Shown here in pieces: positions 2,189 to 61,344 of a stretch of 64,000 nt of DNA. Position 1 is the stretch's first letter, and the number at the start of each line of letters is the position of its first letter. The notes beneath the pieces are model-generated. The model had not been told where the DNA came from, ran no database searches, and saw nothing but the letters and a program-made list of their open reading frames with translations. Where the stretch lies: IMG/VR virus record IMGVR_UViG_3300033182_000980, positions 311,692-375,691 of that record. One strand, given 5' to 3'. A program made the position numbers and the translations under genes.

Positions 2189-2482
2189 GTGATAATGAGA
2201 ACACTAAACGAAGCCATAGTTATTGTTAAGAGCCTGTTTTCTGCTCCATTGGGTAGTTTCCCTAAAGGTGGGATAGAAAGCTCTTTAAGGGTGCGTTTAA
2301 GCACCTCTCCGACCACACTCACACTGATCTCTGAACATGACTTGTCAGTTTCTCTTAGTAGGGGTGAGGACAAGTGGATCGTTCATTATCTTGATGTTGA
2401 GAGAACCTTTGATGACTTAGGTGATGCTGTCTTTGCTTTGGTCGAGCCTATCATCCGAGTTGAGGTGTCAAAGCGTTTATAG
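2189..2482 (+). CDS. Hypothetical protein
   Basis: SD AAGGAGG; late-type motif TAGATTATCTAT at 2154-2165. Confidence 0.6.
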   Translation: MIMRTLNEAIVIVKSLFSAPLGSFPKGGIESSLRVRLSTSPTTLTLISEHDLSVSLSRGEDKWIVHYLDVERTFDDLGDAVFALVEPIIRVEVSKRL

Positions 2483-2539
2483 TTTCTTTATGGGTTCGCC
2501 ATTGGTGATCTAACCTTAACCGACAATGGAGACTGACTT

Positions 2540-3208
2540 ATGAGAAGATCAGCCAGCGAGATTATTAGAAATCTTGAGATGAGGGTGACTCGTCTTGAAA
2601 AAGAAGCTAAAGAGTCATACCCTTGGGATGACTGCATGAAAGACCAAATGGAGCAGTATGGAGACGAAGAAACTGCGGCCAAGGTCTGTGGTAAAATCAA
2701 AGCACAATCACAAGGTCTAGGTAAGTACAAGTCAGCCAGCGTCACAGAGCGTGATGTCATTGACGCTATGAATAAGTTTAAGAGCCTATATGAAGCTGGG
2801 TTCTTAGACAGGGCTACTTATGAGACTCATTGGGATAGGCTTCAAGATCAACTCGCTGACTTTAGGCTTGAAGATGATGATCTTGACGATCCCTCAGTGC
2901 CAAAGGTTGGGGACATTCTTTACTCGTCATGGGGATACAATATGACCCTCGTTGATTTCTACAAGGTCATGGCAGTCTCTCCAAGTGGTAAGTCCATCAC
3001 CCTGCAAATGCTAGAGTCAGATGTAGTAGACGGTGATGCTGGTTATTCGGGTCATGTTATGCCCTCAAGACATGAGAACAGGCGTGAGAAGCCAATCAAG
3101 AACAAAAGGGTATCACCGAGTCGTGATGGGTACTCTGTTAAGATCAACTCATCAGCTAATGCTTACAAGTGGGACGGCAAGAAGAAATACTTCAATCGCA
3201 TGGATTAG
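2540..3208 (+). CDS. MRRSASE-leader protein 1 (leader + YPWDDC mini-domain + SWGY domain)
   Basis: Leader shared with 6245 and 54303; C-terminal VGDILYSSWGYNMTLVDFYKV resembles a common phage domain. Confidence 0.85.
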   Translation: MRRSASEIIRNLEMRVTRLEKEAKESYPWDDCMKDQMEQYGDEETAAKVCGKIKAQSQGLGKYKSASVTERDVIDAMNKFKSLYEAGFLDRATYETHWDRLQDQLADFRLEDDDLDDPSVPKVGDILYSSWGYNMTLVDFYKVMAVSPSGKSITLQMLESDVVDGDAGYSGHVMPSRHENRREKPIKNKRVSPSRDGYSVKINSSANAYKWDGKKKYFNRMD

Positions 3209-3476
3209 GCTTCCAACGGTATGTATGGACGACCTCATCATTCACCATTTGAGCGTCATGGGTGAAAGTGCCATTGTCATAGAAGTAGGTTAAGAGCTTG
3301 CCCTTTTGAGAGGCTACATCTTTGTGTACCATCTCAAGCTCATCAATGGTGATGACATCGGCTTTGGTGAAACCCTCGATCTCACCTTGCTCATTGTAGA
3401 CCACCTCTGCGATCATGCCGATCTCATCTTCGCCCTCTTGGGCGACCTTTATCATACGATAGTTCCAGTTAAACAT
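3192..3476 (-). CDS. Hypothetical protein
   Basis: WNYRM..A.....I.EV.YNE.G pattern common in phage ORFs; coupled to the upstream gene. Confidence 0.65.
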   Translation of the reverse strand: MFNWNYRMIKVAQEGEDEIGMIAEVVYNEQGEIEGFTKADVITIDELEMVHKDVASQKGKLLTYFYDNGTFTHDAQMVNDEVVHTYRWKPNPCD

Positions 3477-3477
3477 T

Positions 3478-3933
3478 TTAGTCTCCGTGTACGAGTTGGT
3501 TGTATGTTTCCTCTAGGCTTTTTAGGTCGTGCTTAAGCATCAGTAGGTCTTGGATTTCGGAAGCTAGACCCCAGTTTCCATGATCTATGCCCTCACCATT
3601 GGTTGGGGATTTACAATCCTTGTAGTAGGAGTGTATCTCTTCCCCTGGATAACACGCTGGATCACGAGGGTCATATCCATCAGCGATACATTCCTCGATA
3701 TAGTCTGATCCATACTCAGCCTCGTAGTCCAAAGGGATGAGGTCTTTGGTCATGTCTAGTGGGTCAAGACCTTTGAGGACACATTCTTTACACAGGATTG
3801 TCTCATAACACCCATTATAAGAGGGAATGACCCGACCACCTCGACCCATACAGGCTTTGCAAGAGCGAGGGTGCTGTTGAACGATTTGAGCATGGATTTG
3901 AGCGATCTTTGTGTCTATGGCTTGTTGGTTCAT
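3478..3933 (-). CDS. CxxCxGxGG zinc-finger protein (paralog of 43599, 49194, 49740)
   Basis: HPRSCKACMGRGG...CKECVLKGLDPLD; start moved to the ATG at 3933 after SD AAAGGAGA. Confidence 0.75.
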   Translation of the reverse strand: MNQQAIDTKIAQIHAQIVQQHPRSCKACMGRGGRVIPSYNGCYETILCKECVLKGLDPLDMTKDLIPLDYEAEYGSDYIEECIADGYDPRDPACYPGEEIHSYYKDCKSPTNGEGIDHGNWGLASEIQDLLMLKHDLKSLEETYNQLVHGD

Positions 3934-6169: not shown

Positions 6170-6244
6170 GATGGGTACTCCTTTGTAGTTTATTTATTGG
6201 CTACCAATGTTTATATGATTTAACCCTTGAATGGAGAATGACTT

Positions 6245-6694
6245 ATGAGAAGATCAGCTAGTGAAATTATTAATGACCTTGAGATGAGGGTCGCTCGTCT
6301 TGAGAAATCAGCAGTCAACCTCAGAATGAATCCAGCTAAAAAGAGTTCGGGTATAGAAGAGGTGGTTGATGCCCTTAAAGACGGAAGCCTTAACCTCTAT
6401 GAGTTAAGCGACTTTGCTGTGAACACCTTGAGGGACAACTATCGAAGCCTCAAAGAAGTGAGACTAAGGAAAGAGTATGAGCAGAAACTCAGCGAGATCA
6501 ACCCAAGTGCAGACCTTCGTAAGCTCCATGATTGGTATGCTCGACAAATGCGAGGTGATGTTGCTGGTGAGGCGAGCTTTAAGAAGTTTATGAAGCTGAA
6601 GCCAGATGTTGACTTAGGGATTCCCCTTCACTCAAGTATCAAGTATTACCTCTATCAAGCTCTGATTGCAAACCAGACACTTAGACTACCTTAA
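6245..6694 (+). CDS. MRRSASE-leader protein 2
   Basis: MRRSASEIINDLEMRVARLEKSA leader; TAGTTTATTTAT at 6186. Confidence 0.85.
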   Translation: MRRSASEIINDLEMRVARLEKSAVNLRMNPAKKSSGIEEVVDALKDGSLNLYELSDFAVNTLRDNYRSLKEVRLRKEYEQKLSEINPSADLRKLHDWYARQMRGDVAGEASFKKFMKLKPDVDLGIPLHSSIKYYLYQALIANQTLRLP

Positions 6695-7626: not shown

Positions 7627-7903
7627 GGTCAAAGAAATCTTGAGAATCACTTATGAGATAGGGGCATTGATTATCGAAACCCCATGTGGCGTTGTTAGTA
7701 TTCACTAGGATGTAAATATCTGTATCAGCTAAGTACCAACGCTCCACCCCTGCATATTCCCCATACTTTTTGAACCCACTCTCGATAAGTCCGACAGAAA
7801 AGAACATCAAACATTTGTTCTCTTTGCCCTCTTTAAACGCTTCTAGGGCTTTGTTCGACCATCCTCTTTTGAAGTCGATTTTGTTTGTGGCGAGAGAGAT
7901 CAT
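7580..7903 (-). CDS. ExGF/IRxxW family protein
   Basis: LIESGF and DLIRQEW; ATGA overlap with the upstream gene. Confidence 0.65.
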   Translation of the reverse strand: MISLATNKIDFKRGWSNKALEAFKEGKENKCLMFFSVGLIESGFKKYGEYAGVERWYLADTDIYILVNTNNATWGFDNQCPYLISDSQDFFDLIRQEWSKRTRSSEC

Positions 7904-8880
7904 AGGGCTGTGTTATCCTCCTCACCTGTATCAACATCATCAAGCAATGATTTGTAATAAGGCTCTGGCCCACGATCTCTAGGCTTACTAAAGTCGGGTA
8001 CACTTGATGCCACACTATCCACAGTGTTTGGTGCAGGAGCACCTTGTACGGTATCGCTAGAACCTGGGAGCTGTTCTTGATCCATCGCTTCAAAGAAGTT
8101 GAGGTCAATGTTGGTCACGATATGTGAGAGGTGTACCTCATCGAGTTGCTTGTTCGGGTCATAGGGGGCGAGTTGAGCTGTTGTGCCAGAGAGAGCATTG
8201 AACAAGATGTCGTCTCTTTCGATTAACAACTGTTCTCTTAAATCACAGAGCTTGATGATCCTCGCTTCGAGGTTGTTCCTCAAGTGTGAGATTTCTTGTG
8301 TCGCCCATTTACGGGCATGGTATACCACACCACCTATTTGATCTGCTCTTGGATAAATACTCTTATTACTGCCACCTAACCTCCAACCAGGAAACTTTAG
8401 AACAGGCAACCACCCCGAAGTATCTATCTGCTCTGACTCTTCTGCTGTCGCAGTTCTAGGGTATAGGACACCACCGTATGGCTGATCATAGCTCTTGTAA
8501 ACATTCCGAGTATTGCCTTGTGAGTCTGTTACTCTAGGTTGATCTACTCCTGGTTCAGTTTCTCGCTCAATCCAATCATAAGAGTCTGGTCTTAAAAACA
8601 TGGATATATCAAAGGGGTTTCCACCTTGAGCGATATATGCTTTTAAGAGCTTTCCGAGAGCAGAGTTGACATCGACATCAAGTCCGACTCTTTTTTCAGT
8701 ACAGACTTGAGCTTCTCCTTCACCCGTCTTTTCATAGGTGATGCGTATCTCTCCTATGCGATTGATCTCTTTATTGATGTGGTTGATCCGATAACCAACA
8801 TTCTGTCTTTGCAATAGGACAAAGCGTCTAAACTCTAGCCATTGCCCTTTACGAAACATACAGTTCCAACCGAAGCTCAT
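7900..8880 (-). CDS. Putative virion structural protein
   Basis: 326 aa, translationally coupled in the operon with the giant protein. Confidence 0.6.
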   Translation of the reverse strand: MSFGWNCMFRKGQWLEFRRFVLLQRQNVGYRINHINKEINRIGEIRITYEKTGEGEAQVCTEKRVGLDVDVNSALGKLLKAYIAQGGNPFDISMFLRPDSYDWIERETEPGVDQPRVTDSQGNTRNVYKSYDQPYGGVLYPRTATAEESEQIDTSGWLPVLKFPGWRLGGSNKSIYPRADQIGGVVYHARKWATQEISHLRNNLEARIIKLCDLREQLLIERDDILFNALSGTTAQLAPYDPNKQLDEVHLSHIVTNIDLNFFEAMDQEQLPGSSDTVQGAPAPNTVDSVASSVPDFSKPRDRGPEPYYKSLLDDVDTGEEDNTAL

Positions 8881-11282
8881 TATCCTTCTCCCTCTCCACC
8901 CATGAGGGCGATAAAGAAATCAATAAGAATGGATGGAACACCTCCAGCTACAACCATCGCACCAGTGCCATACCCGCCCGAACCGATGTCGGGTTTATCT
9001 TCTGACTGTTGAAGGGCAGAGATAAGACCTGCTGTACCATCAGCTAAATGGAATGTGCCGTATAGACCAGCAGGGAAACGGAAGCTCAGTATTAAATCTA
9101 TGAGGGTTTTTATCTTTGCTATAATCGCCTGTACTTGGGCGATCCTCGTTTTCAGCATATGGATGAACTTAAGTATCTGAGCAACGATACCCTCAAGACC
9201 TTTTAGAAATCCTTCCATGTACTTTTTAACTGTATCTATAAAGTCGGTTAAAGAGCTGAGGTCGGCATCTCTAAAGGGTCGCTGATTGATCCAAGCACCT
9301 GTCTCGGTTGTGAGAGGGGGGCTTAGGGTGACTACTCTTTGTGCGAGTCTGAATGTCTCTTTAAAGTCCTTATGCAAAAAGAGGTGTCCGATAAACACTC
9401 CGTGGTCTATAACCACAGGGGATTTAGATCCGACCCAACGATCATGGACAACCGAGTCTCCAAGTCTCTCATAAAGCTGTAAATCGTAGTTAGCGTTTAG
9501 CATATCTAATGTTACATCTCGATCTTCATTGATATAAATGCTAGTAGGTTGAATACCTACTTCCCCTCCTGTAGCTGTGTCCTTCATCATCTTTGCGAGG
9601 TCGAGAGGAAACTCGTTGATCTTGTCTAAGCTATCCTTCAAAGAGTTAAGGGTCGCATCCGAAGGCATATCAGACTTAAACCTAAGCATGATCTTCCTTA
9701 GCCATTCATTAGCCTTTAATGCAAACTCTTGGGTGAGCTGATTTCCTACATATAAGTCAGCGTTAGATTCATAATAAAGCGATATGAGTTGTTGCTCTTT
9801 ACCCACAGGACTATCAAAGCCAAGTATGTTCAAGTGGTATACCTCATACGGATGAGTTAGCAGGTGAGCGAGCCAATAAAACTTAACTGCTTTGAGATAC
9901 TTTTCTCGTATGTCGGAGGGGCTTTTGACCACTACTGTGGCAGAGGGTTTAGAGATACTACCTTTACCCATTGCAAGAGAGACTAAACTCTCACCGACAC
10001 GACCAGAGGTAAGAAAATCTCCTTCCACTAACTGATCCTGTGTCCCGAATCGTAAAAGACCAGGTAGCTCAACAGTTGTCTTACTTATGGAGTTGTAGTC
10101 ATCAGAGTCGATTGTGAGCGAATACAGAGTAATGTAATACTCTGGATCTAAGTTCCCATCTATCTCTAGTTTCTCTAAGGGAATGTCGAAAGAGAAATCG
10201 TTGTCTCCAACTAGACCTCCACCCCCTCCCCCATAGATGAAGCACCGATAAACATCGGAGATTTTTCGACCGTCAATGTTGTTGAGGTAATAACTGTCCT
10301 CTCCCTTTATGATGAAAGACCCACTTGTGCCTATCCCATCGGGAGTCTCATCAAGGGGTTGGAACTCTTTGGACTCATCGAGTTTAGTGAACGCTGGGTC
10401 ATCACTCTTAATAAGAGGCCAGAGACGAGGGTCTGTTTCCCCACCTACCAAGTCTTGAACAGTAGATTTATTTGGGCCGAATGCGGCTATCTCCACATCT
10501 TCTGTAGGCGGCCTCTCCACATTGTTAATGTAAGCGATCTTCTCATTTGCATTACGAGTGGCTACAGAAAACAAGAAGTAGTCGGGCAATATGAATGTCT
10601 TAGGAAAAACCTTATTCGTTGAGGGTGGGGCTGGTAAGTTCCATTTGATTCTTATCCCATCTGGCTTATACACATTTGGGATCTCGATGTCTCCAACGAT
10701 GTCATTGTAATAACCTACTCGTACATTTATCGGAGCTTCTGCTTTATCGCTTGCCCCTTTAAATGACAGAAAGAGCTTAAGTAGCTTCTTAATGTAAGCG
10801 ATGATCGCCCCTAACTTTGAGGCATCCGCACCTGCAAAGAAGGTCATTGCGAATACTTTGCTTTGAGGGGAGAAGTTAGGGCGAGTAGGGTCTTTGAGGT
10901 TTAATAGCTTCTCTACCATCCGGCTTTCAAATGCAGGGTATCCACCGAGTAGGCTTTCAGCAGGGTTCTTGAACTCTTTTTTATCCCATGTGATATACCA
11001 GCCAAGATTGCGAAGATCAGCGATAAAGGAATTTAACAGAGCGATGATTTCTTCAATGATTGGCTTAAGTGGATTGGTGAAGTCGATCAGTAATGAAGCA
11101 ATGAAGTCCAATGCAGAGTTTACTAGAGCGAATGTGAGATTGACGATCTCAAACATCGCATCCGTTTTCTCTTTGGTTTCATCTAAGAGCTTATAAAAAT
11201 CGTTCTCCTTGGCAATACCTACATGACCCCATGTATTAAAGCCAGGTGCTTTAGCCCATCCATTAGGGTCGTTATCAGCCAT
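8880..11282 (-). CDS. Putative virion (baseplate-associated) protein, 800 aa
   Basis: Amphipathic helical N- and C-terminal blocks flanking a beta-rich region; operon context. Confidence 0.6.
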   Translation of the reverse strand: MADNDPNGWAKAPGFNTWGHVGIAKENDFYKLLDETKEKTDAMFEIVNLTFALVNSALDFIASLLIDFTNPLKPIIEEIIALLNSFIADLRNLGWYITWDKKEFKNPAESLLGGYPAFESRMVEKLLNLKDPTRPNFSPQSKVFAMTFFAGADASKLGAIIAYIKKLLKLFLSFKGASDKAEAPINVRVGYYNDIVGDIEIPNVYKPDGIRIKWNLPAPPSTNKVFPKTFILPDYFLFSVATRNANEKIAYINNVERPPTEDVEIAAFGPNKSTVQDLVGGETDPRLWPLIKSDDPAFTKLDESKEFQPLDETPDGIGTSGSFIIKGEDSYYLNNIDGRKISDVYRCFIYGGGGGGLVGDNDFSFDIPLEKLEIDGNLDPEYYITLYSLTIDSDDYNSISKTTVELPGLLRFGTQDQLVEGDFLTSGRVGESLVSLAMGKGSISKPSATVVVKSPSDIREKYLKAVKFYWLAHLLTHPYEVYHLNILGFDSPVGKEQQLISLYYESNADLYVGNQLTQEFALKANEWLRKIMLRFKSDMPSDATLNSLKDSLDKINEFPLDLAKMMKDTATGGEVGIQPTSIYINEDRDVTLDMLNANYDLQLYERLGDSVVHDRWVGSKSPVVIDHGVFIGHLFLHKDFKETFRLAQRVVTLSPPLTTETGAWINQRPFRDADLSSLTDFIDTVKKYMEGFLKGLEGIVAQILKFIHMLKTRIAQVQAIIAKIKTLIDLILSFRFPAGLYGTFHLADGTAGLISALQQSEDKPDIGSGGYGTGAMVVAGGVPSILIDFFIALMGGEGEG

Positions 11283-11475
11283 TGGGGTCTACCTTTCTCT
11301 TTTTCTTTTGTAGCTCCCACTTAGCGAGTGCTTGTTCGAGGACAGCTAAGTTGCCTAAGTCCTCTTGTAGCTTACCCTCGTAGTGTGCTTGAAGCGTCCT
11401 TAAGTTCTCTAGGAGCTTCCCTACCTCTGTGCCATTAAGGTTTGGCTCTTTGGGTGTCTTTTTCCACTTACTCAT
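11275..11475 (-). CDS. Small coiled-coil protein
   Basis: Overlaps both neighbours (translational coupling). Confidence 0.65.
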   Translation of the reverse strand: MSKWKKTPKEPNLNGTEVGKLLENLRTLQAHYEGKLQEDLGNLAVLEQALAKWELQKKKRKVDPNG

Positions 11476-14400
11476 TTGATGTCCTCCAATGCTGTGTCAT
11501 CGGGGTTGCTAAGATCCACTCTACTAAGTTTAGATAGAGTGCCGTTTACTTGATCAGTACGAACAGAAATCCATGCGTACCTACTATCTCTAGCGTTCAT
11601 AGAAGATATATCATTTTCAAGCACTGTCGGGATGCCATCTTCGGGTTCTCCGTACCCCTCATCTGCCATCTTGGGATCTTCAATCAACATTCGCCTGTCA
11701 TATACTGATAAACAAGTCTCGTTGTTCTCAAAAGGCTGACTCGCTTGATTACCCAAGATGCTCTGCAATAAAATATCATTTGACGGATGGCTGTTATCTG
11801 CGATGCCTACATTATTAATCAATCCCTCGGCTTCATATTGCGACCAAGTGTAAGGCTGTGTTGGAAGCTGATTAAATGAACGAATGACCTCAACCCATGA
11901 GAGCGTCCTCTCCCTAAAAAATAAGAACGATCCAGCTAACGACTCACTAAGGGTAGCGTTGCGTCTAAGGATACGATATGAGAAGGGGTGGATAGACTCT
12001 GGCGTTGTAGCGTATGTACCACCAACAATCCCTGCTGTCTGTCTCAAAGGTTGTGCGTCATCTCCACTTACAGAGGGCAATAGCTTATAGGTTGTCCTCG
12101 CTGTTCCACTATCTCCAGCATAGAACTCAACAGAGAGCGTGTTAGCGTCATCTACAGATACGACCTTATACGCCCCTCGATTGTCATCAAGGTGATTGGG
12201 TATGCCAGGTGTGCCGTCTCCATTATCACCTTGTGGTGGTGCTCCATATTCAGTCGCTGTTCCTGTAAGCAGACCTTGAGGATCAATCACTAAGAAATCA
12301 CCCTCTGCTACACCTAGAGCGATGAAGTCAGCGTTGGTGTCGGATAGCACATTCTCTACTCCAACGGAGATGCCCTCTTGAGGTGTTGTGGAATAAATCT
12401 CTGTGAAGCCATGTTCAATGAACTGATCGAACGCTTGTAGCTCTGGGATAAGAGGAACACGAGTGATGACCTTAAAGACATCATTGTTCCCAACTGCCGA
12501 GACAGACCCTCTAATGACAGAGCATTTAAGCGTTGAGCCTACCTCAAGGACTCGTAAATAAAGTGTCTCTTGGTTAGACCCATTAACGCACTGTACTTGA
12601 TCACCTACCGACACAACATTTGTAAAGTCTCCCACCTGTGTATCTGTACCAGAGACATCAGCGACACCTTCACCATCAACCTTGAGGGGTGTAAGGGTGG
12701 CTACACTGTTAGCATAGGCAACGCTATCCACTCGACCTACTCGTTGCTCATAAAGGTATCGGAAACCCTCGAACGCATAGACGAGCTTAGAGAACACATC
12801 AGTAAAGCGTCTAAGTCTACGAACGGTGAAGTTCACTCTCTCATAGAAATCCCAAGCTGGTGGGTTTGTTAAGGTGGACTCAATCGGAGATCGAACTTGG
12901 CTTGGGAGTTCGCTTGGAGTAGCACCAAACTCAACAGGGGTTGTGCCTGCGTAGTCTCTCAAGAGTCGGGGGAATGTAGGATCAAGATAGATGCCTGCAC
13001 TCACATTAACAGTGATCTTGATCGTGTCATTCGGTGTGATGAATGTATCGTGGTATTCATTGCCTTCGGGATTATCTGTAACACGCTCGTATATATTCTG
13101 AGGTAGGTTGAAAGCCACAACCATGTTGTTTTCATCACGCTCTACCCTAGACTCATCTAAGTTATTTTTAGAACCTGTGTATCCCCCACCCACATTGAAA
13201 TAAATCTCGATGGTGTTATCTAGGCTTACAGGTATCTCACCATACCCTAATAGCAAGGTGTTAAAAGGTATGCGTGTTAAACCACCGATAGTTTGTTGAC
13301 CCTCTCCTACAAGGGAGATGAGTTCGTTTATCGTCACACCAGTAGGATGTGGTCCTCCACCTCCACCACCTGGTTTTTCACCATCAGCATAATGTGGGTT
13401 AGCGTGGTTAGCGTTTGTATTCTCGGTAAAGGTAAATGACCCGCCATTTTCTCCATCTGTCAAGGATTCGTATTCCACATGGACTTGAGAAAACCCATAC
13501 AGTTCATCATATACATGAGTAGACACAGAGAGTGGTTTGCTGAGGTAGTTGTTATTAAGCAGTATAATCAACTCACCGGATGCACCAAAGTAGTCGCTTA
13601 GGTTCGGCACATCTGTTGTGATTGTTCCAGTACCATCTCCATTATTCACAACGCTTACAACTTTGGGGAACACTACAGGTAGTAAAGCACTTGAACCTAG
13701 AGTCTCTGTGATTTCTACTGTAGCGTCTGTCTTAACCACACCTCTGACCCGATGCGTACCTGCATTATGTCCATTCTCGATGTAAAGAAGATCACCTGTG
13801 AGGACATGATCCATTGAACCTTGTGAACCAGGTGAAGGTATTACATTACGAAGAATGCCCTTACCACTATCAGTAAGGTTTGCTGGATCTGCAACCCCGA
13901 CCAATCCAGAACTTGCAAGACCTTGTAAGATCGTGTCCGACTCATCAACCTCTGACCCAATGAAGATAGACATAGGGTCATCTGTTCGAGAGATCCCATT
14001 AAGTGATCTTGGTCTGAAAGTAGTGCTGTTGACTGAATAGAAAGAAGTGAACTCCTTGTTGTTTACATCACTATCCACAGTGCCTGTACTTGCCCCTCCC
14101 TCTTCTCTGACCTCAAATGTGCTACTCTTAATCGTCAGCTTTTTAGTCGTATCAGACCCTCCCGCAAAAGCGGGGTCTGTGATTAGAGTAAAAATTTGTC
14201 GATCTGTGGGGAACACAACATCGAGCCTGTTGTTTGCAATCTCGGCTGTGCTAGTGACTGACAGCCTATAGTCATGGGAAACAGGATTACCAGTCTGCTG
14301 GTCAGCCCCAAAGAAGTATCCATTCCCACCATTTGGTTGAACCGAAAAATAAAAAATGTCCGTCGTATTATCCCAGAACCTGTTATAGAGCCAAGAGTTC

Positions 14401-29450: not shown

Positions 29451-29509
29451 AGTTAATACTTTCTTTATATCTATTCTTACACAGATCATTTATATGAAAG
29501 GCATAAACA

Positions 29510-30247
29510 ATGTATGACAAGATCGCTTATCTAAGATTAAGGATTGCTCGTTTAGAACGACTCGCAGATTTAAGGCCAGGTCTTGGCACAAAAGACCCTT
29601 GCTACATTATTCAGAGAGCAGTTAACAATGGAGCAGACATCCCAAAAGCCCGATATGTTAAAGAGGTGTTGGAGGATCTTGAAATCGTCACATACGGAGA
29701 GTCTGGCCGTAGTGGGTTAGAAGACATTCCTAGTAGCGAAAAGAATGATTGGTATGGGGCTACTTACCCTCGCAGATTGAAGGAAAGAGTTGAGGGCGAG
29801 GAGATTGCATATGGAAAAGGTGGGAAGAAAAAGTTGCCAGTCAACATTCCACATCTCACTTATTCTCAACACGCTCAGTTTAGGATGGATCTGAGAGGGG
29901 TCACTACGAAACAAGTAGAAGCTGTTGTGAAGCACTGGCACACACAGAATGCAATGGTACGAGAGGGTATACGAGATTATGACCGACTAAAAGAAATCGC
30001 CATGACAAATAAAGAGGAGCATGATTCAATCCGAGAGAACTTGGACTATCTTGAAAGGATTCTGTCTCCTGATGAGTTCAGAAAGCAGAAGGCTGATATG
30101 AAAAGGTACAATAGGAGTATGGAGATCAACCATAAATATATGGGTGTCTTTGTAGGGTTTGTGCCTCAGAGAGATGGAAGTATAGACATCAAGACCGTCT
30201 TTAATCTTAAGAAAGACGATGAGCCTTACGGAAACTATGGTTGCTAA
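29510..30247 (+). CDS. Leader-bearing protein with a DUF4258/RelE-like RNase-fold domain
   Basis: LRLRIARLERLA leader; YSQHAQFRMDLRGVTTKQV...IDIKTVF. Confidence 0.65.
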   Translation: MYDKIAYLRLRIARLERLADLRPGLGTKDPCYIIQRAVNNGADIPKARYVKEVLEDLEIVTYGESGRSGLEDIPSSEKNDWYGATYPRRLKERVEGEEIAYGKGGKKKLPVNIPHLTYSQHAQFRMDLRGVTTKQVEAVVKHWHTQNAMVREGIRDYDRLKEIAMTNKEEHDSIRENLDYLERILSPDEFRKQKADMKRYNRSMEINHKYMGVFVGFVPQRDGSIDIKTVFNLKKDDEPYGNYGC

Positions 30248-45430: not shown

Positions 45431-45497
45431 AAGCGTTCTCCTTTACGAAGTAGTGGTTTTCAAAGAAATAATCGTTGGTCGCTACCAACACTAGTCC

Positions 45498-54196: not shown

Positions 54197-54241
54197 GAAG
54201 AGCCTATCTTCCTTGAATGAGGAGATAGGCTCTTTTCGTTT
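54197..54241 (+). terminator. Intrinsic terminator
   Basis: GAAGAGCCTATCTTCCT / AGGAGATAGGCTCTTT stem followed by a T-rich run. Confidence 0.8.
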
Positions 54242-54302
54242 GTAGTTTCTTTATATCTTCTCATAAGTGATCTCTTAACCTTAACCAAATGGAGACTGAC
54301 TT

Positions 54303-54725
54303 ATGAGAAGATCAGCATCAGAAGTAATTAGAAATCTTGAGATGAGGATCGCTCGTCTTGAAAGGCAGTCTTCAAGTACGGACGACTACATACTTGCAAA
54401 GAAAATTGAGCGTCAGTTGGACGAAAACGGTCTTACCTTAAAAGACCTCGAAAGAAACCCTAAGCTCCTTGACCTTGATGAGATTGAGCATCAAAATCCT
54501 AGCATGAAATCTGACATACAAAGATGGGTCAAGAAGGGTTGGATCACCATTGAGGGTGGTGAATATGAGGAGTCTCGTGGAAGCCGATCATATCCTGGAG
54601 GTTGGGATGCGTACCTCATCACCAAAAAAGGTATTCAAGAGATTAGGACTTGGAACACCCTACAACAGATGGGTCGGCTTCACCACCACATCCAGATGGG
54701 AGTGATTAGGCCTCTGACCACCTAA
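54303..54725 (+). CDS. MRRSASE-leader protein 3 (C-terminal region possibly winged-helix)
   Basis: MRRSASEVIRNLEMRIARLERQS; WVKKGWI...YLITKKG. Confidence 0.85.
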   Translation: MRRSASEVIRNLEMRIARLERQSSSTDDYILAKKIERQLDENGLTLKDLERNPKLLDLDEIEHQNPSMKSDIQRWVKKGWITIEGGEYEESRGSRSYPGGWDAYLITKKGIQEIRTWNTLQQMGRLHHHIQMGVIRPLTT

Positions 54726-55356
54726 AGAAACGATCATCTTCTTTATGAGTGATCCCCATACGCTTCACTTTACCAGCTTTCTTCCCACGCACATAGCGTT
54801 CAAAGTCAGTAAAGTGTCTACGCTCTAAGTCGGACAAGTCATCAACGGTAATCTGTTCTTCGACTAAGAGCCAAAAGCGACTCGCCGCTTTAGCTACCCA
54901 AAAGGCATCGGCTTGGTGGTTATTCCACCTCTTAGCACCTTGCCCTTGAGTAGCTTGTTTAGCCGCGTCTACCATATCTCCCTTACCCATCTTCCACCCC
55001 TTTGGTCGATTAAGGAAAGCAGAGGCATGAGCTTTAACTTGATTGGGGGAGAGGTAAACAGTGTCGCACTTCTCAAGCATGAGGGCTTCATTGCTGTAGA
55101 GGAACAGACCGTACATACCCTCGGAATATAGATCGTTGAAGATGGGAGACTCGATCCCGACACGCAGTGTTTCTTCGGGGTGGTCAGCTCTGACTTTCTG
55201 TACGATTTCTCTTAAACCTTCTCTAAGAGTGATATATCTATCAACGAACATCATCTTGGCTTCTGTTTTCATTGTGCCTTTATCCATGAAGTGTCCGTCA
55301 TCACGGATAAGCGTCCACCCAAAGTTTCTAAGTGAGGGGTCGAGTCCTAAGATCAT
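54706..55356 (-). CDS. ruvC: Holliday junction resolvase RuvC-like
   Basis: ILGLDPSL..FGW, VGIE, QVK, HQADA catalytic pattern. Confidence 0.85.
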   Translation of the reverse strand: MILGLDPSLRNFGWTLIRDDGHFMDKGTMKTEAKMMFVDRYITLREGLREIVQKVRADHPEETLRVGIESPIFNDLYSEGMYGLFLYSNEALMLEKCDTVYLSPNQVKAHASAFLNRPKGWKMGKGDMVDAAKQATQGQGAKRWNNHQADAFWVAKAASRFWLLVEEQITVDDLSDLERRHFTDFERYVRGKKAGKVKRMGITHKEDDRFFRWSEA

Positions 55357-55435
55357 GTGGTCAATCCTTTTGTAGTTTATTTATGATCGTCTTTATATGT
55401 TCGTTATATGATACCCCTTTTAAGGAGAAAACCAC

Positions 55436-56434
55436 ATGAGACATGATAACAGTTATCGTAGAGCAAAACGCTCTTATCGTGAGGCTTCAATGAGCCGACA
55501 GGCAACAATGGAGCGTATTGCAGGGCTTGAGATGAAGGTCGCGGCGATGGAATACCAAGCAGGGATGAAAGAGTCTCTTAAGGGGCTATTCCTCAAGTAT
55601 GTTGCCGAGCCTCTTGATAAGTATCGCAGACATCTTAATCTTTTTAAGATGCCCATTGATGATCTAATGGATGATGTAATCGAGGCGATTGCTCCAGAGT
55701 ATGCCGAGAAGCTCATGGAGGCTGAGGTTGACGCTGACTTCACCGAGTTTGAAGAGGGTGCTAAACTCCGACAAGATGAGAGAGCACATGGTCAGTCCAA
55801 ATTCCCCCCTCGTAATAAGTCTCCAGAGTTCTATGAGGGTTATCATTGGGGCGATGTTAATGATGGCCCTGTTCCGAATGAGGTTAAGAAGCGTATCATC
55901 CAGGAAGCCGCTCAAGAGCACAGCAAGAAGGTTACCGAGAGAGCTTTGAAAAAGGTTCTTAATGTAATCAACCCTGTTGAGATCATCAAACACGCTTACC
56001 ACATCATCAAGAAGCATGGATGGGATCCTCATACTGAGGAGATTTGGTATAAGAAATGGCCTAAGCGTCTGTTCAAGGTTGTTCTCATGGGTATTGCTGT
56101 AGCTATCGTTGAGACAATCGAACACGCTGTACTACCTGCCATTATGGTTAAGCTCACGGGCAACCCAGCTTGGTATGGACTTGCCGCTGTACCTCTCCTT
56201 GAGATTGTTCTTCCTATCGTCCTCGCTTACTTCAAGGGAGCTAAGAAAGACACTGTTGATGAGCCAGGACACCTTGATTGGTATGAAGAGAACTATGGAG
56301 AAATCGAGGATGTCCTTGACGATAATGTCTTTGACGATGATGACGATGATGATAGCCGAGTAGCGAGCTATCGTCCTCGTGGTCGCAGAGCGAGTTATCT
56401 TGATCCTGCTCTCAAGTTTAACTACAACCTTTAA
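55436..56434 (+). CDS. Late-type membrane protein with leader-like RIAGLEMKVAAME segment
   Basis: TAGTTTATTTAT at 55373; hydrophobic C-terminal helices; several R/K-x-A motifs. Confidence 0.7.
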   Translation: MRHDNSYRRAKRSYREASMSRQATMERIAGLEMKVAAMEYQAGMKESLKGLFLKYVAEPLDKYRRHLNLFKMPIDDLMDDVIEAIAPEYAEKLMEAEVDADFTEFEEGAKLRQDERAHGQSKFPPRNKSPEFYEGYHWGDVNDGPVPNEVKKRIIQEAAQEHSKKVTERALKKVLNVINPVEIIKHAYHIIKKHGWDPHTEEIWYKKWPKRLFKVVLMGIAVAIVETIEHAVLPAIMVKLTGNPAWYGLAAVPLLEIVLPIVLAYFKGAKKDTVDEPGHLDWYEENYGEIEDVLDDNVFDDDDDDDSRVASYRPRGRRASYLDPALKFNYNL

Positions 56435-57874: not shown

Positions 57875-59080
57875 TTAAAGCATCCAACCTATAATAGAAA
57901 CAGTCTGTACTCCAGAGTCTTGATCGGACTTAAAGAGCATATAACCCTTGTTGCCCTCACGAGTACACCCAAAGACGATGTTATCATTATAGATTTCTAC
58001 TGCCTTTTTGATCGACAAATAGTTAAAATCGAAAGTGGCGATGTCGTCACCCTCACCAGCCTCTTTGAGCCGAGTCGCATACATCAAGTTGGAGAGGTCT
58101 GTGATCTCTTCGAGTGGCTTCTCTGCATCCTCGAATGGGGGCACTTCGAGATTGTATGAGATCGTCTTACTGTTAGACGAGTTCATCTCAAGGCTAGGAG
58201 GCAATAAAGCCTCATCTTCGGGGTCTTTGAATGTGACTTTATAGTTGGTCTTATCAGCAAACGCTGACAAGAATGTAAGCCCATTCATAAAGTTATCCTT
58301 AGACAGCCTCCAAACCCTACGAGGCGTCCAGTTAAACGCATCAGCATATTGCTGTGTGATGGGAGGGTAGGTGTAAGGCAGATCCATTACAGCGAATAAC
58401 GCACCGTCCTCTGCCTTAAAGAATGTCGCTTGACCACCACTAAGGACTTCAATCACATTACCGTCATATGCTTTGAGGAACTTCATCAGTGGTGCGATGT
58501 CCTTGTAGTGGATCTTTACATCCATCCCTTGAAGGTCATCGTGTCGGGACATATTAAGCATATATCCGTCACAGGCAATCGCTTTACCACCCTCGATCAA
58601 GATCATTGCAAGCTCTGGTCTACGGCTATCATCTTGTGATACATACTGTCGGTTTGTATTAAGCGTATCATAGAGGATAGAAGCAGAAATCTCTCCGACC
58701 TTAGTCGCTTGTTTGAACTTCTCGACCCAAGGAGGGAATGCTTCGGGATCTAATGAGACTGTGGTTGCCTCACCCTCACTGCCCTTTAAGGATACTTCCT
58801 TCTCCTCATCGTTGTACTCAATCTCAACGACACCTGTCATAACATTAGTCGCTGAGATTAAACGCTTACCCTCGATAGAAAAAGACCCTTTATCTTGAAC
58901 TGTAGCACCGATGACAGGGATCTTTGAAAACTGACGAGGGGGAGAACAAGCCATGACGCTCACACCAGCTTCTTCGGCAGAGAAGATAAAGTGTGAGGTG
59001 ATGTCTTGATTTGTACCCAAAGTGTTCTGAGCGATTGATAGGGTTTCTTTCAAGTCTTGTGCTGAGACTGTAATCTTCAT
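57875..59080 (-). CDS. dnaN: DNA polymerase III beta-like sliding clamp
   Basis: MKITV...L, F.....FP, VSQDDSRRPEL..I...G...IACDG, YP motifs of beta clamps; 401 aa. Confidence 0.7.
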   Translation of the reverse strand: MKITVSAQDLKETLSIAQNTLGTNQDITSHFIFSAEEAGVSVMACSPPRQFSKIPVIGATVQDKGSFSIEGKRLISATNVMTGVVEIEYNDEEKEVSLKGSEGEATTVSLDPEAFPPWVEKFKQATKVGEISASILYDTLNTNRQYVSQDDSRRPELAMILIEGGKAIACDGYMLNMSRHDDLQGMDVKIHYKDIAPLMKFLKAYDGNVIEVLSGGQATFFKAEDGALFAVMDLPYTYPPITQQYADAFNWTPRRVWRLSKDNFMNGLTFLSAFADKTNYKVTFKDPEDEALLPPSLEMNSSNSKTISYNLEVPPFEDAEKPLEEITDLSNLMYATRLKEAGEGDDIATFDFNYLSIKKAVEIYNDNIVFGCTREGNKGYMLFKSDQDSGVQTVSIIGWML

Positions 59081-59340
59081 AGAGAATCTACTCGACTTTC
59101 AATGCGTGTGATGACTTGCTCTGCATCCAACAGAGCTTCGTTAAGTTTGGTGATTGCCTCTTGCCTTTCAGCTTTGAGGCGATTGATTTCATCTTCAAGA
59201 GTGTCGGGGTTAATACCCCTTTCGACCAATCTTTTATCAAGCTCCGAGAGACTTGATCTGGCTGCTTCTAGCTTACCAAGCAAACGCTCTCGCCTTCGCT
59301 CAATGTCTAGTTTTTTATTTACGAGTTGTTCAAGATCCAT
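59077..59340 (-). CDS. Small coiled-coil protein
   Basis: Heptad repeats around GINP; SD. Confidence 0.7.
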   Translation of the reverse strand: MDLEQLVNKKLDIERRRERLLGKLEAARSSLSELDKRLVERGINPDTLEDEINRLKAERQEAITKLNEALLDAEQVITRIESRVDSL

Positions 59341-59383
59341 TTGAACTTTCCTTTCGTAGTGTGGTTATCAACCATTATATGAT

Positions 59384-60358
59384 TTACTTCATATTGAGGT
59401 TGATAATCCCCCCACCTTGTTCAGTCGGGTCTGGTGTCTTTGTTTTACCTAGACCACGCTTCGCCGCATTACGCTTCTTTTGTGCTTGTCGTTCTTCACA
59501 GATGTTCTCGAACTTACACCAAGTACAGTGCTTAGGGATTGGGTTAGGCTCAAACACCCCCCTGTGGATAGCACGATTAGTTTCAATCGCCTCTTTCCCT
59601 AGCCTACGAATATCGTCATCTGTGATCTTCACTTCAACAAATCCAGTCCACTCATCATCTGGATTTGCAAAGTGCTTCTCTGGAGGGTTTGATCGAGGAT
59701 ACCTAAAGTAAAAGAACCCAAGCCGATCTGGTACTTTCCCATATTGTAATCTAAAACAAAGGGCATACCACCGAAGCTGATCTTCGTCCTCATATTTCAT
59801 TGGAGTAGATGCGTTCTTACCATCAAGGATATGAACCTTGCCCTCCTTGTCTCGATATACAAGGTCAGCAATACCACATACATTAAAGTATTTGTTCATA
59901 GGTGGGGTCATACGCAACTCGGACTTCGCATACGGCCCAAGAAATCTATGCTCTTTTAAAATCTCAAGAAAGTTTTGAGCACCTTTATGACAGATGTCCA
60001 TTGCTTCTTCTCTAGTCATATATGACCAGATCACATAGTGGCGTTGCTCTGCTTTGGCAAACGCTTGATCAACGATCTCCTTGATCTTTGTCTGTATCGT
60101 CTTAGGATCACGATACAACTCATGGTCGTATATTTCCTCAACCACAGTAGATAATACAGTACCCATTAACTGATGATGCTCGGAGTCTTTTGACTCATCA
60201 GGCAATGGCTTTGGCTTTCCTTTACCAGCCCCTAAATCATGGTCGGGGTGTCCTTTATGCCATAGGTATTGTTGAGGGCAAGCCCTCATCATTTTCAAGT
60301 GAGACCAGTATATGTTTCTCATGGGATCGTCCAATACTTCGGTGTTAGGTTCACCCAT
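59384..60358 (-). CDS. PD-(D/E)XK RecB/AddB/Cas4-like exonuclease with a likely Fe-S cluster
   Basis: ACPQQY; GIADLV...ILDGK; QLRWYAL; CTWC...C. Confidence 0.85.
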   Translation of the reverse strand: MGEPNTEVLDDPMRNIYWSHLKMMRACPQQYLWHKGHPDHDLGAGKGKPKPLPDESKDSEHHQLMGTVLSTVVEEIYDHELYRDPKTIQTKIKEIVDQAFAKAEQRHYVIWSYMTREEAMDICHKGAQNFLEILKEHRFLGPYAKSELRMTPPMNKYFNVCGIADLVYRDKEGKVHILDGKNASTPMKYEDEDQLRWYALCFRLQYGKVPDRLGFFYFRYPRSNPPEKHFANPDDEWTGFVEVKITDDDIRRLGKEAIETNRAIHRGVFEPNPIPKHCTWCKFENICEERQAQKKRNAAKRGLGKTKTPDPTEQGGGIINLNMK

Positions 60359-60459
60359 ATTGTACCTCCTATCTAGTTAAAGTTGACGACCCTCTTCCTT
60401 ATATGTTTGTAATCCCTTTATGACCCCTAGATTATGTAGCAAACGCATTTGGGGGTCTT

Positions 60460-61344
60460 ATGTTAGACAGAGTAGTACAACGACACATGGTTAGGCTTGC
60501 TTGCCAAGTAGCTTATGAGCAAACCCCTAACTTGAAGAAAGCACACGCTTCGGATTTCTCTCTTGAAGCAATCCAAGTAATCGCCAAGCACTTAACCTCC
60601 AATAGCCGTCAAGACTTTACGCAGAAGAAGGCTTTTTTCTCCATAGTAAAAAAGGTCAAGCAACTCATCGACCTCTTTAAGAAAGCACCTCAAGCGTGGG
60701 ATAAGTTTAAAACCATGCTAGGTATTACTTCTAGCGGTGTGGCGATGGTTAAAGAAATCGACACAAAGCTCGGTAATCTTCTTGAGGAGGGGAAGAAGAA
60801 GCTCGACCAAGTAGCTAAAAGAGTATGGAGTGAAATACCCATGCTTAAGTTGATTGGTGAGGTTCTTGAAGAAAAGAACAGGTGGGAAGTAGCATTAGAG
60901 AACGCAAAAAAGTTTGTACCAGAAAAGGTATTGAATGCGTTTAAAGCGATTGAATCTAGTGCCACATCAATAGGCGATTATTTAGATGACCTATTAAGCA
61001 AGTCTAAGACCCTCAAAGCATTATCAGCACCAATCAAAATCTATCTGTTTTTTCAGATATGGGATTGGTTTGCTGACTTTGACTTTAGGGTCGTGGTGGC
61101 AGGTATTCTCGGCACGATTGATTTCAAAGACTTGATCGCCCTATTACCCTCGGAGGGTATCGAGATCATCCTTGAGCTTGTACTACCCCCACCAGCCAAT
61201 GGAGCGTTAGCAAAGCTCATAATAGAAGTGGGGGTTGCCTCTGCCTTTGCCATGATTATGGTGCTAGAGATCAAACACTTGATGAAGGTCTACAAGGTAA
61301 ACAACACCAAAGACCTCTTAGTAAAGCTAGAGGCTAATGGCTAA
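60460..61344 (+). CDS. Late-type helical/membrane protein
   Basis: MLDRVVQRH...RLA...KKA N-terminus; hydrophobic C-terminal helices. Confidence 0.7.
   Translation: MLDRVVQRHMVRLACQVAYEQTPNLKKAHASDFSLEAIQVIAKHLTSNSRQDFTQKKAFFSIVKKVKQLIDLFKKAPQAWDKFKTMLGITSSGVAMVKEIDTKLGNLLEEGKKKLDQVAKRVWSEIPMLKLIGEVLEEKNRWEVALENAKKFVPEKVLNAFKAIESSATSIGDYLDDLLSKSKTLKALSAPIKIYLFFQIWDWFADFDFRVVVAGILGTIDFKDLIALLPSEGIEIILELVLPPPANGALAKLIIEVGVASAFAMIMVLEIKHLMKVYKVNNTKDLLVKLEANG

What the first reader, a model, noticed from the sequence alone, without database searches (positions are those of the whole stretch)
2480..61344. Portable leader (MRRSASE.I..LEMR.ARLE) fused to unrelated cargo: candidate capsid-targeting system for virion-packaged effectors
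Seen: genes 2540, 6245 and 54303 share about 90 bp at the DNA level (AATGGAGA.TGACTTATGAGAAGATCAGC...CTTGAGATGAGG.T..CTCGTCTTGA). This covers the SD and first ~23 codons, after which the proteins are unrelated. Looser versions occur in 29510 (LRLRIARLERLA) and 55436 (RIAGLEMKVAAMEYQA), and possibly 60460. All are plus-strand genes, mostly set against minus-strand neighbours, each 50-63 bp behind TAGTTTNTTTAT or a variant. The leader ends in K/R-x-A/S (KEA, KSA, RQS, RLA), and the same triplet recurs between domains (KYKSA in 2540; KKA twice in 60460). Known: T4 internal proteins IPI-III carry a short N-terminal capsid-targeting sequence removed by the prohead protease. Inference: promoter + SD + leader form a mobile module that routes varied proteins into the head for injection.
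Basis: partly seen in the sequence, partly recalled or inferred. Interest (0 to 1): 0.85.

Follow-up and report, generated by a model that had tools for sequence, protein, structure and literature searches.

The report
Portable leader tag on huge-phage proteins
A marine huge phage related to Bacillus phage G attaches the same 23-residue helical leader, driven by the promoter type that also precedes its capsid gene, to many unrelated small proteins; this looks like an address tag for loading proteins into the virus particle, but loading has not been shown.

Summary
The core observation holds. Genes 2540, 6245 and 54303 share the ribosome-binding site and first 22-23 codons (77-83% DNA identity), then fall to random similarity.

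Codon usage shows selection on the peptide. Ser6 switches between TCA and AGT/AGC, and Arg15 and Arg18 use all six codons.

The leader is far more widespread than the window suggests:
- at least 12 copies in this 375-kb genome;
- 74 distinct proteins in 60 cargo clusters among fetched relatives;
- 1,056 cluster representatives among 1.84 billion proteins;
- none in 50,697 GenBank phage records or 185,579 cellular genomes.

Promoter box, a cassette-specific 5' UTR, ribosome-binding site and leader form one conserved cassette. One whole cassette is present or absent between related genomes.

In this same genome the box also sits upstream of the head operon and of the decoration-like gene plus major capsid gene. 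The capsid protein is phage G gp27-like. Leader genes often lie beside portal, protease or capsid genes.

A short core, R-x-A-R-L-E-[KR]-Q-[AS], also recurs between domains.

Gene 29510 carries a real short variant. Gene 55436 has the box but no significant leader. Gene 60460 has neither.

A virion-loading tag with a cleavable junction is the best reading (about 0.45). Packaging, cleavage and injection are untested.

The parts
2476..2491 (+). Promoter box (TAGTTTCTTTAT with upstream T-rich flank) of leader gene 2540
   Evidence: Exact pattern match. nhmmer box model. Same box upstream of the head operon and capsid gene elsewhere in the genome.
2492..2539 (+). Cassette-specific 5' UTR with conserved GTGATCT and AACCTTAA blocks and the AATGGAGA ribosome-binding site
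   Evidence: UTR model hit, E 4e-7. Alignment of 44 cassettes from many genomes.
2540..2608 (+). Leader, codons 1-23 of gene 2540
   Evidence: Leader HMM 49.7 bits. AlphaFold2 helix at residues 5-25.
2540..3208 (+). Leader gene 1: leader, then an inserted Cys-containing mini-domain (aa 24-66), a disordered KYKSAS junction (aa 62-67), a helical region and a beta domain (aa 121-222, phrog_37844)
   Evidence: Orthologs join the leader directly to 'ASVTERD', so the mini-domain is an insertion exactly at the junction.
6182..6197 (+). Promoter box of leader gene 6245
6245..6694 (+). Leader gene 2 (leader = 6245-6313); cargo has no family match
   Evidence: Leader HMM 51.9 bits.
54238..54255 (+). Promoter box of leader gene 54303, directly after a terminator-like hairpin (54200-54236)
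54255..54302 (+). 5' UTR of gene 54303. In this copy only, it pairs with the ribosome-binding site and start codon.
   Evidence: MFE -23.7 kcal/mol, z -4.48, 0 of 200 shuffles as stable. UTR model E 5e-11.
54303..54725 (+). Leader gene 3 (leader = 54303-54371); the cargo resembles a winged-helix fold only weakly
   Evidence: Leader HMM 53.5 bits. Atlas structural matches at TM about 0.5, a lead only.
29452..29469 (+). Box variant (TACTTTCTTTAT) upstream of gene 29510
   Evidence: 1 mismatch; 5.5 bits.
29510..30247 (+). Gene with the short leader variant (core RIARLER at aa 11-17) and a different UTR type
   Evidence: Relatives in L100, L173 and L123 carry the same short N-terminal form.
55367..55384 (+). 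Promoter box upstream of gene 55436
55436..56434 (+). Box-driven gene without a significant leader. Same promoter class, not a leader protein. A conserved ortholog lies in L005.
   Evidence: Leader HMM 4.3 bits, E 1.7. Ortholog in L005 8342-9370.
62634..62652 (+). Promoter box upstream of gene 62685-63017, which has no leader. This shows the box is not restricted to leader genes.

Best explanation
The leader is a portable address tag. It makes late-expressed accessory proteins join the assembling virus particle, most likely the inside of the procapsid.

Proposed mechanism:
- Residues 5-25 form a short amphipathic, leucine-zipper-like helix. Hydrophobic positions are I9, L12, I/V16 and L19. E13, R15 and E20 are invariant.
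- The helix docks on a shared partner in the head-assembly machinery, such as the scaffold, core proteins or the capsid shell interior.
- The conserved end of the tag, R-[IV]-A-R-L-E-[KR]-Q-[AS], is probably where the head-maturation protease releases the cargo. The same core between two domains would then cut multi-domain proteins apart.
- New cargos are recruited by recombination at the conserved cassette of late-type promoter box, special 5' UTR, ribosome-binding site and leader.

Shown: the shared peptide is under protein-level selection, the cassette is conserved, the cargos are very diverse, the promoter box is shared with head genes, and the core motif recurs internally.

Inferred: the docking partner, cleavage, presence in virions and delivery into the host.
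For: 1. Peptide-level selection. Ser6 is TCA in 35, AGT in 29 and AGC in 4 copies. Arg15 and Arg18 use all six codons. A5, L12, E13, R15 and E20 are invariant in 71 modules.
2. One tag, many cargos. 74 distinct leader proteins fall in 60 cargo clusters. 1,056 representatives reach E<=1e-3 among 1.84e9, nearly all starting at residue 1. The genome holds at least 12 copies.
3. Cargos are small and soluble. Median length is 119 aa and 5 of 216 have a TM-like segment, as expected for packaged proteins.
4. Shared promoter type. The box lies upstream of the head operon (L112:1569) and of the 208-aa gene plus capsid gene (L112:9230) of the same genome. It holds a fixed position 710-770 nt before the capsid gene in 25 of 46 distinct relatives. 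The capsid protein is phrog_2522 (2.7e-51, on the L101 homolog, 97% identical) and matches phage G gp27, PDB 6wkk, E 3.6e-63.
5. Neighbourhood. Two leader genes lie directly after the capsid gene in L101. Leader genes are inserted right after the portal and right after the ClpP-like protease in L095. Up to 5 or more lie within 10 kb of the capsid gene in several relatives.
6. The core motif recurs between domains in 8 of 217 leader proteins against 0.12 expected. A full leader lies inside a conserved 573-aa WGR protein next to the portal (38.7 bits).
7. AlphaFold2 models the leader as a separate helix followed by linkers of low confidence.
8. Precedent. T4 internal proteins carry 10-19-residue capsid targeting sequences removed by the prohead protease (PMC9026906). 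SPN3US head proteins gp45 and gp225 have N-terminal propeptides of 20 and 24 residues (PMC10052503).
Against: - There is no proteomic, structural or expression evidence for packaging, cleavage or injection.
- The junction does not match the known T4 (L/I-x-E) or phiKZ/SPN3US (A/S/G-x-E) cleavage rules. The specificity of this phage's proteases is unknown.
- Leader genes are scattered over the whole genome. The window copies lie among replication and recombination genes. In this genome only one copy lies within 10 kb of the capsid gene, so there is no measurable enrichment.
- Relatives with a nearly identical capsid protein lack the leader where checked. These are LR745208.1 (89% identity) and the L163-L182 subclade (91-95% identity). 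The tag is therefore accessory to head assembly.
- The leader can be internal (L096 573-aa protein, P0100, P0136). The T4 tag is characterised at the N-terminus.
- 'Late' timing is inferred from position only. The RNA-library contigs laid do not prove transcription.
Confidence: 0.45

Rival explanations
1. The leader is a docking or oligomerisation helix for a partner that is not the capsid. Candidates are another late structure, a phage-built compartment, or a host hub protein. The proteins would share a meeting place in the infected cell rather than a ride in the virion.
For: The peptide is a generic 2.5-heptad amphipathic helix. Leader genes lie all over the genome. Cargo leads point to nucleic-acid-binding folds: WGR, a weak winged-helix match and an Mrr N-terminal-like fold. 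These could act in the cell. Capsid-conserving relatives do without the leader.
Against: This does not explain the promoter box shared with head genes. It does not explain the repeated insertion beside portal, protease and capsid genes. It does not explain the conserved junction or inter-domain core motif, which looks like a processing site.
Confidence: 0.25
2. The leader anchors small domains on the outside of the capsid, or elsewhere on the virion surface. It would be a display anchor rather than an internal loading tag.
For: The evidence is the same co-expression and neighbourhood as for internal loading. The phage G-type head carries a separate decoration protein, and a 208-aa gene sits before the capsid gene.
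Against: A surface anchor would not need a junction that recurs between domains. More than a thousand cargo families of about 120 aa with mixed charge show no adhesion-type domains.
Confidence: 0.1
3. The leader is a timing or degradation tag. A phage ClpP-type protease, or another protease, would recognise it to limit the lifetime of late accessory proteins.
For: A ClpP-like protease gene lies by the portal (phrog_94, 4e-43). A leader gene is inserted directly after it in L095. In phage G, ClpP and ClpX are separate from the head protease (10.1101/2024.12.16.628780).
Against: There is no match to known ClpX N-terminal recognition motifs; I compared these by eye from memory only. A degron would not be expected between two domains, nor to be the most conserved peptide of the clade.
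Confidence: 0.07
4. The conserved stretch is a regulatory nucleic-acid cassette (promoter, UTR and translation start). On this view the encoded peptide is incidental, or the genes are ordinary fast-diverging paralogs.
For: Codons 2 and 3 are almost always AGA (63 of 66 and 65 of 66 Arg codons). That indicates extra nucleotide-level constraint at the start. The UTR is conserved. The 54303 copy folds into a hairpin that hides its ribosome-binding site and start codon (z -4.48).
Against: From codon 5 onward, synonymous sites vary freely while the amino acids stay fixed. RNAalifold finds no consensus structure in 44 cassettes. Only one of five window copies folds better than shuffles. The cargos show no sequence similarity and point to different folds. 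Orthologs of one cargo exist with and without the leader.
Confidence: 0.03

Closest known systems
T4 capsid targeting sequence (CTS) of internal proteins IPI-III and Alt
   Same: Both are short N-terminal peptides shared by otherwise unrelated, non-essential small proteins. In both, the gene sets vary between related phages. T4's tag targets proteins to the prohead core and is removed by the prohead protease (PMC9026906).
   Different: This tag is 23 residues, not 10-19, and has no sequence similarity to the T4 tag. The junction is LE[KR]Q[AS], not L/I-x-E. The head is phage G-like, not T4-like. The scale is far larger, with at least 12 copies per genome and more than 1,000 cargo clusters. The tag comes with its own conserved promoter-UTR cassette. 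Packaging and cleavage are untested here.
Propeptides of phiKZ/SPN3US giant-phage head and ejection proteins
   Same: Both are giant phages in which many proteins would be packaged with the DNA. SPN3US has N-terminal propeptides, two of them of 20 and 24 residues, cut by the prohead protease. Multiple cleavage motifs occur within one protein (PMC10052503).
   Different: Those propeptides are not one shared portable sequence. Their cleavage rule is A/S/G-x-E. The phages are unrelated chimalliviruses.
Encapsulin cargo-loading peptides and microcompartment encapsulation peptides
   Same: In all these systems a short peptide acts as an address for an otherwise arbitrary cargo. Encapsulin shells have the HK97 fold, as does this phage's capsid protein. 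Microcompartment tags are N-terminal amphipathic helices. These statements rest on my own knowledge.
   Different: Encapsulin tags are typically C-terminal and are not cleaved. Neither system is part of a virion. No homology was detected.
Morons and T4 mobile promoter cassettes (PeSL)
   Same: Each leader gene is a self-contained transcription unit with its own promoter, inserted between operons. One differs by presence or absence between close relatives. At the RuvC locus different genomes hold different leader genes.
   Different: Here the mobile unit also encodes the first 23 residues of the protein. No consistent terminator or stem-loop flanks the units. The PeSL comparison is from memory.

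Membership tests
T4-type capsid targeting sequence system | A short N-terminal peptide shared by otherwise unrelated small proteins of one phage | tested here: met
   At least 12 copies in the genome. 60 cargo clusters among 74 proteins. Leader HMM scores of 50-53 bits.
T4-type capsid targeting sequence system | The peptide ends at a prohead-protease site (L/I-x-E in T4) and is removed during head maturation | tested here: inconclusive
   The junction LE[KR]Q[AS] is conserved and its core recurs between domains. It does not fit L/I-x-E. Cleavage cannot be observed with these tools.
T4-type capsid targeting sequence system | Tagged proteins are present in the virion and delivered with the DNA | not testable with these tools
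   No isolate exists and no particle proteome was available. No cultured phage carries the leader.
T4-type capsid targeting sequence system | Expression together with head genes | tested here: inconclusive
   The same promoter box precedes the head operon and the capsid gene. Timing itself was not measured. RNA-library contigs cover the capsid gene and leader sequences but do not prove transcription.
T4-type capsid targeting sequence system | Homology to the T4 head machinery (gp23 capsid, gp21 protease) or to the T4 tag sequence | tested here: not met
   The capsid protein matches phage G gp27 (6wkk, E 3.6e-63) and phrog_2522. The protease candidates are phrog_18299 and ClpP-like phrog_94. 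The leader has no match in any GenBank phage record.
Moron / mobile promoter cassette | Own promoter directly upstream of an inserted gene | tested here: met
   The box lies 41-51 nt before each ATG. It is conserved across 44 cassettes. Promoter activity itself is inferred.
Moron / mobile promoter cassette | Presence or absence of the whole unit between closely related genomes | tested here: met
   DNA run X13 joins L112:13541 to 13964, skipping exactly the box plus leader gene. L095 has two extra leader genes compared with L096.
Moron / mobile promoter cassette | Own terminator or flanking stem-loop | tested here: not met
   No consistent terminator follows the three window genes. Two of them overlap convergent genes.
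Encapsulin-type cargo-loading peptide | The peptide binds the interior of an HK97-fold shell and is usually C-terminal and uncleaved | not testable with these tools
   The location here is N-terminal or internal. Binding could not be modelled because only single-chain prediction was available.

The most novel reading that the evidence does not exclude
A globally abundant clade of marine phage G-like huge phages runs a natural protein-loading system. One 23-residue helical tag, supplied with its own late promoter and translation leader, routes over a thousand unrelated small proteins into the capsid. A short core motif serves as a cleavable linker, so several cargos can be delivered from one precursor. 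If so, this would be the largest known repertoire of virion-delivered proteins. It would also offer a ready-made tag for loading foreign proteins into HK97-type shells.
Probability: 0.35. Interest if true: 0.88.

Novelty: new variant of a known kind. Interest (0 to 1): 0.75.

Why it matters
Huge phages have large capsids and large numbers of genes of unknown function. How they choose which proteins travel with the DNA is known in detail only for T4 and, in part, for phiKZ-like phages.

Here a single sequence tag marks a whole class of late accessory proteins in an uncultured, very widespread marine clade. That makes a long list of 'dark' genes addressable at once. One can ask by mass spectrometry or reporter fusions whether they are packaged, and then what they do on entry.

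If confirmed, the tag would also be a compact tool for loading proteins into phage G-type capsids. The cassette would be an example of a regulatory region and a targeting signal moving together as one evolutionary unit.

Tried and rejected
- **Conserved RNA element in the UTR and start region.** RNAalifold gave no consensus structure. Only the 54303 copy folds better than shuffles. Rfam found nothing.
- **Recent gene conversion as the cause of similarity.** Within-genome cassette identity is 0.73 (UTR) and 0.75 (leader). Between genomes it is 0.70 and 0.75. Rejected.
- **Homology of the leader to the putative scaffold repeats** ('ARVARLAD', seen by eye). The leader HMM did not pick it up. The scaffold family does have a conserved AMERKA..RLG[RK]xASQ stretch. 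Its relation to the leader is unproven.
- **A head gene present only in leader-bearing relatives, as a candidate receptor.** All five head-module genes occur in both groups.
- **Cultured relatives carrying the leader.** None was found by tblastn or blastn. None was found in 185,579 cellular genomes.
- **Cargo function.** Pfam and PHROGs gave almost nothing. A PDB fold search of the gene 2540 model found nothing at E<=0.001. Atlas matches are leads only.
- **Transcript ends from public RNA runs.** No RNA run was listed as holding the sequence. The contigs laid have ends set by assembly, not by transcription.
- **Literature search for the motif.** No paper describing it was found.
- **Protease family by sequence against solved structures.** No significant match.

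Full report
**Origin of the window.** The window is the last 64 kb of IMG/VR contig IMGVR_UViG_3300033182_000980, which is 375,691 bp long. Window base 1 is contig base 311,692. No near relative exists among GenBank phage records at DNA level.

The capsid protein, found elsewhere in the contig, matches the solved phage G gp27 capsid protein (6wkk, E 3.6e-63). The portal is related to those of an uncultured 485-kb phage (71% identity), Tunturiibacter phage Tunturi_5 (37%) and Bacillus phage G (26%). The phage therefore belongs to an uncultured marine branch of phage G-like huge phages.

The window itself carries replication and recombination genes:
- a RecA/UvsX-like gene (61347-62636, minus strand);
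- a sliding clamp (57875-59080, minus strand);
- a PD-(D/E)XK exonuclease (59384-60358, minus strand);
- an AAA/VWA gene pair (33645-34805 minus strand, 36554-37366 plus strand);
- a 3,049-aa ORF with no family match.

A gene at 54706-55356 (minus strand) looks RuvC-like by eye; I did not test it.

**The observation.** Genes 2540, 6245 and 54303 start with the same 22-23 residues. Ungapped DNA identity from -16 to +66 is 77-83%. It falls to 26-32% in the next 84 nt.

A leader HMM built from 69 distinct leaders gave these scores:

| Gene | Score | Note |
|---|---|---|
| 54303 | 53.5 bits | E about 1e-15 |
| 6245 | 51.9 bits | E about 1e-15 |
| 2540 | 49.7 bits | E about 1e-15 |
| 29510 | 6.9 bits | E 0.25, core only |
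| 55436 | 4.3 bits | E 1.7 |
| 60460 | no hit | |

The short form in 29510 is nonetheless real. The core R-[IVL]-A-[RK]-L-E occurs 82 times in 276,009 residues from this clade against 0.15 expected. Several relatives carry the same short N-terminal version.

**Selection acts on the peptide.** In 71 distinct modules, Ser6 is TCA in 35, AGT in 29 and AGC in 4. Arg15 and Arg18 use all six Arg codons. Ala5 uses all four Ala codons. A5, L12, E13, R15 and E20 never change.

Codons 2 and 3 are almost always AGA, which points to an added nucleotide-level constraint around the start. Beyond E20 the consensus continues as [KR]-Q-[AS] (198, 142 and 199 of 216) and then decays. AlphaFold2 models residues 5-25 of gene 2540 as one helix, followed by domains joined through low-confidence linkers. 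The hydrophobic positions 9, 12, 16 and 19 and the charged positions 13, 15 and 20 fit a short leucine-zipper-like heptad pattern. That last point is my reading of the sequence.

**The cassette.** Aligning 44 upstream regions from many genomes shows four conserved blocks:
- the box (consensus TAGTTTATTTAT with a T-rich 5' flank);
- about 7 variable bases;
- a UTR with GTGATCTC and TTAACCTTAA blocks;
- the ribosome-binding site AATGGAGAA.

In the window the full cassette model finds only the three strict genes, and weakly 55436. The box alone also precedes 29510 and 62685.

I tested three other explanations for the cassette's conservation:
- The UTR is not a conserved RNA structure.
- Cassettes are no more alike within a genome than between genomes. 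Purifying selection, not recent gene conversion, keeps them similar.
- The unit is gained and lost as a whole. A DNA run holds a relative that joins L112:13541 to 13964, removing exactly the box plus a leader gene. L095 has leader genes after its portal and protease genes where L096 has none. At the RuvC locus the window has one leader gene where L005 has three, plus another after the 55436 ortholog.

**Cargo diversity.** Regex and HMM scans of all fetched loci gave 74 distinct leader proteins. All carry the leader at the annotated start. Two of them (LP008, LP009) have hundreds of open in-frame codons upstream. LP009 turned out to lie inside a 584-aa ORF. The cargos fall into 60 BLASTP clusters.

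A profile search of 1.84 billion cluster representatives found 1,056 with E<=1e-3 and 89 with E<=1e-10. Nearly all of the 150 best listed carry the leader at or near residue 1, with lengths mostly 43-482 aa. The contig holds at least 12 copies on both strands.

Family searches name almost nothing. WGR appears in two members and a few PHROGs of unknown function appear in others. Leads from predicted structures differ between cargos:
- the beta domain of 2540 resembles the N-terminal domain of Mrr-type enzymes (TM 0.75 by query);
- the 54303 cargo gives weak winged-helix matches (TM about 0.5).

A PDB fold search gave no significant hit. Cargos are small (median 119 aa), soluble (5 of 216 with a TM-like segment) and of mixed charge.

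In the 2540 family some orthologs lack the leader. The window gene has a 43-residue Cys-containing mini-domain inserted exactly at the leader-cargo junction.

**Link to head assembly.** The head genes of the same genome were fetched.

L112 holds a head operon:
- genes of 344 and 1171 aa;
- a 482-aa homolog of a phrog_18299 head-maturation protease;
- a 513-aa acidic EF-hand protein that I take to be the scaffold;
- a 208-aa gene;
- the 292-aa capsid gene.

A leader gene lies 2.7 kb further on.

L096 holds:
- the portal;
- a ClpP-like protease (phrog_94, 4e-43, scored on the 94%-identical L012 homolog);
- a 573-aa WGR protein with a full leader at residues 308-329 (38.7 bits).

The promoter box stands upstream of several genes:
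- the head operon;
- the 208-aa gene plus capsid gene;
- the 573-aa gene;
- a 177-aa gene after the protease;
- a 631-aa gene beside the portal.

It keeps its position before the capsid gene in 25 of 46 distinct relatives. These genes lack the special UTR. The box is therefore a general promoter of the class that includes the capsid gene, presumably late. The UTR belongs to the leader cassette.

In relatives, leader genes lie directly after the capsid gene (L101) and reach five or more within 10 kb of it. RNA-library contigs from one seawater sample lie on the 208-aa gene, the capsid gene and three leader-containing sequences. This does not prove transcription.

**Internal motifs.** Among 217 N-terminal-leader proteins, 8 have a second core (R-x-A-R-L-E-[KRNG]-[QS]-[AS]) between two domains against 0.12 expected. 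The sample is biased toward high scorers.

P0100 shares the 310-residue N-terminal domain and the internal leader of the 573-aa protein but has a different C-terminal cargo. That indicates cargo exchange at the leader. A conserved junction at the end of the tag that also recurs between domains is what a processing site would look like. No cleavage has been observed.

**Interpretation.** The portable-module idea is well supported. The most economical function is a virion-incorporation tag with a cleavable junction, working like the T4 capsid targeting sequence (PMC9026906) or the short propeptides of SPN3US (PMC10052503).

The case is circumstantial. It rests on the shared promoter type, the neighbourhood, the junction logic, the cargo properties and precedent.

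Points against:
- the copies are scattered;
- the leader is absent from relatives with 89-95% identical capsid proteins;
- the leader is sometimes internal;
- the junction matches no known protease rule.

I put this reading at about 0.45. A non-capsid docking role gets about 0.25, and the remaining alternatives are lower. 'Effector' is not supported by any cargo annotation.

**Novelty.** No GenBank phage record, no representative cellular genome and no searchable paper contains the leader. If it works as proposed, it is a new variant of a known kind of system. It is distinguished by its sequence, its scale, its phage lineage and its fusion to a dedicated promoter-UTR cassette.

Noticed in passing
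window 11472-20621 (-), with 8880-11282 and 7900-8880 downstream: A 3,049-aa ORF has no Pfam or PHROG match. It heads a minus-strand run of large genes (800 aa, 326 aa) that are also unmatched. A weak box variant lies upstream at 21264-21275. These may be virion proteins.
   Followed up: partly
window 54255-54325: Only in the 54303 copy does the 5' UTR pair over 14 bp with the region spanning the start codon, with a second helix over the ribosome-binding site. MFE is -23.7 kcal/mol, z -4.48. Other copies do not fold better than shuffles.
   Followed up: yes
window 2511-2520, 54277-54286 and cassettes in A4: The conserved UTR block TTAACCTTAA resembles the T7 gene 10 'epsilon' translational enhancer (TTAACTTTA). 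This resemblance is recalled from memory and was not tested.
   Followed up: no
window 2609-2737: A 43-residue Cys-containing mini-domain (YPWDDC...CGKIK) is inserted at the leader-cargo junction of gene 2540. It also occurs, sometimes with other Cys motifs, in metagenomic proteins P0022-P0024 and P0027-P0031. Its function is unknown.
   Followed up: partly
L112:10983-12291: A DNA run holds a relative that lacks this stretch just after the capsid gene. The stretch carries a 103-aa membrane-like ORF and a 303-aa ORF. The 303-aa ORF looks like a homing endonuclease by eye; this was not tested.
   Followed up: no
L112:10001-10879 and loci L103-L182: The capsid protein matched 574 IMG/VR stretches. 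The 80 loci kept are 91-100% identical. The neighbouring protease, putative scaffold and 208-aa proteins are only 34-75% identical in many of the same loci. This is unusually strong conservation of one head gene.
   Followed up: partly
window, 11 sites, e.g. 24348-24362 (-), 32759-32773 (-), 45435-45449 (-): A second recurrent upstream element, YTCKYAAAGGAGAAC, precedes non-leader genes (11 matches against 1.2 expected). It is distinct from the AATGGAGAA site of leader genes.
   Followed up: partly
L096:7242-8963; P0100: A conserved 573-aa protein beside the portal has an N-terminal domain, an internal full leader and a WGR domain. P0100 keeps the N-terminal domain and leader but has an unrelated C-terminal part.
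   Followed up: partly
window 56335-56434; L112:7670-9211: The C-terminus of gene 55436 (…ASYRPRGRRASY…) resembles the C-terminal basic tail of the 513-aa putative scaffold (…ASYRPRTSARKA…). Seen by eye only.
   Followed up: no
window 29510-30247: There is a weak, sub-threshold Pfam hit to DUF4258 at residues 118-142 (E 0.0017, 19 bits against a cut-off of 25).
   Followed up: no
window 33645-34805 (-) and 36554-37366 (+): An AAA ATPase (phrog_249, labelled 'porphyrin biosynthesis'; Pfam AAA_5) lies near a weak VWA-domain protein. They form a pair of unknown role next to the small-gene arrays.
   Followed up: no
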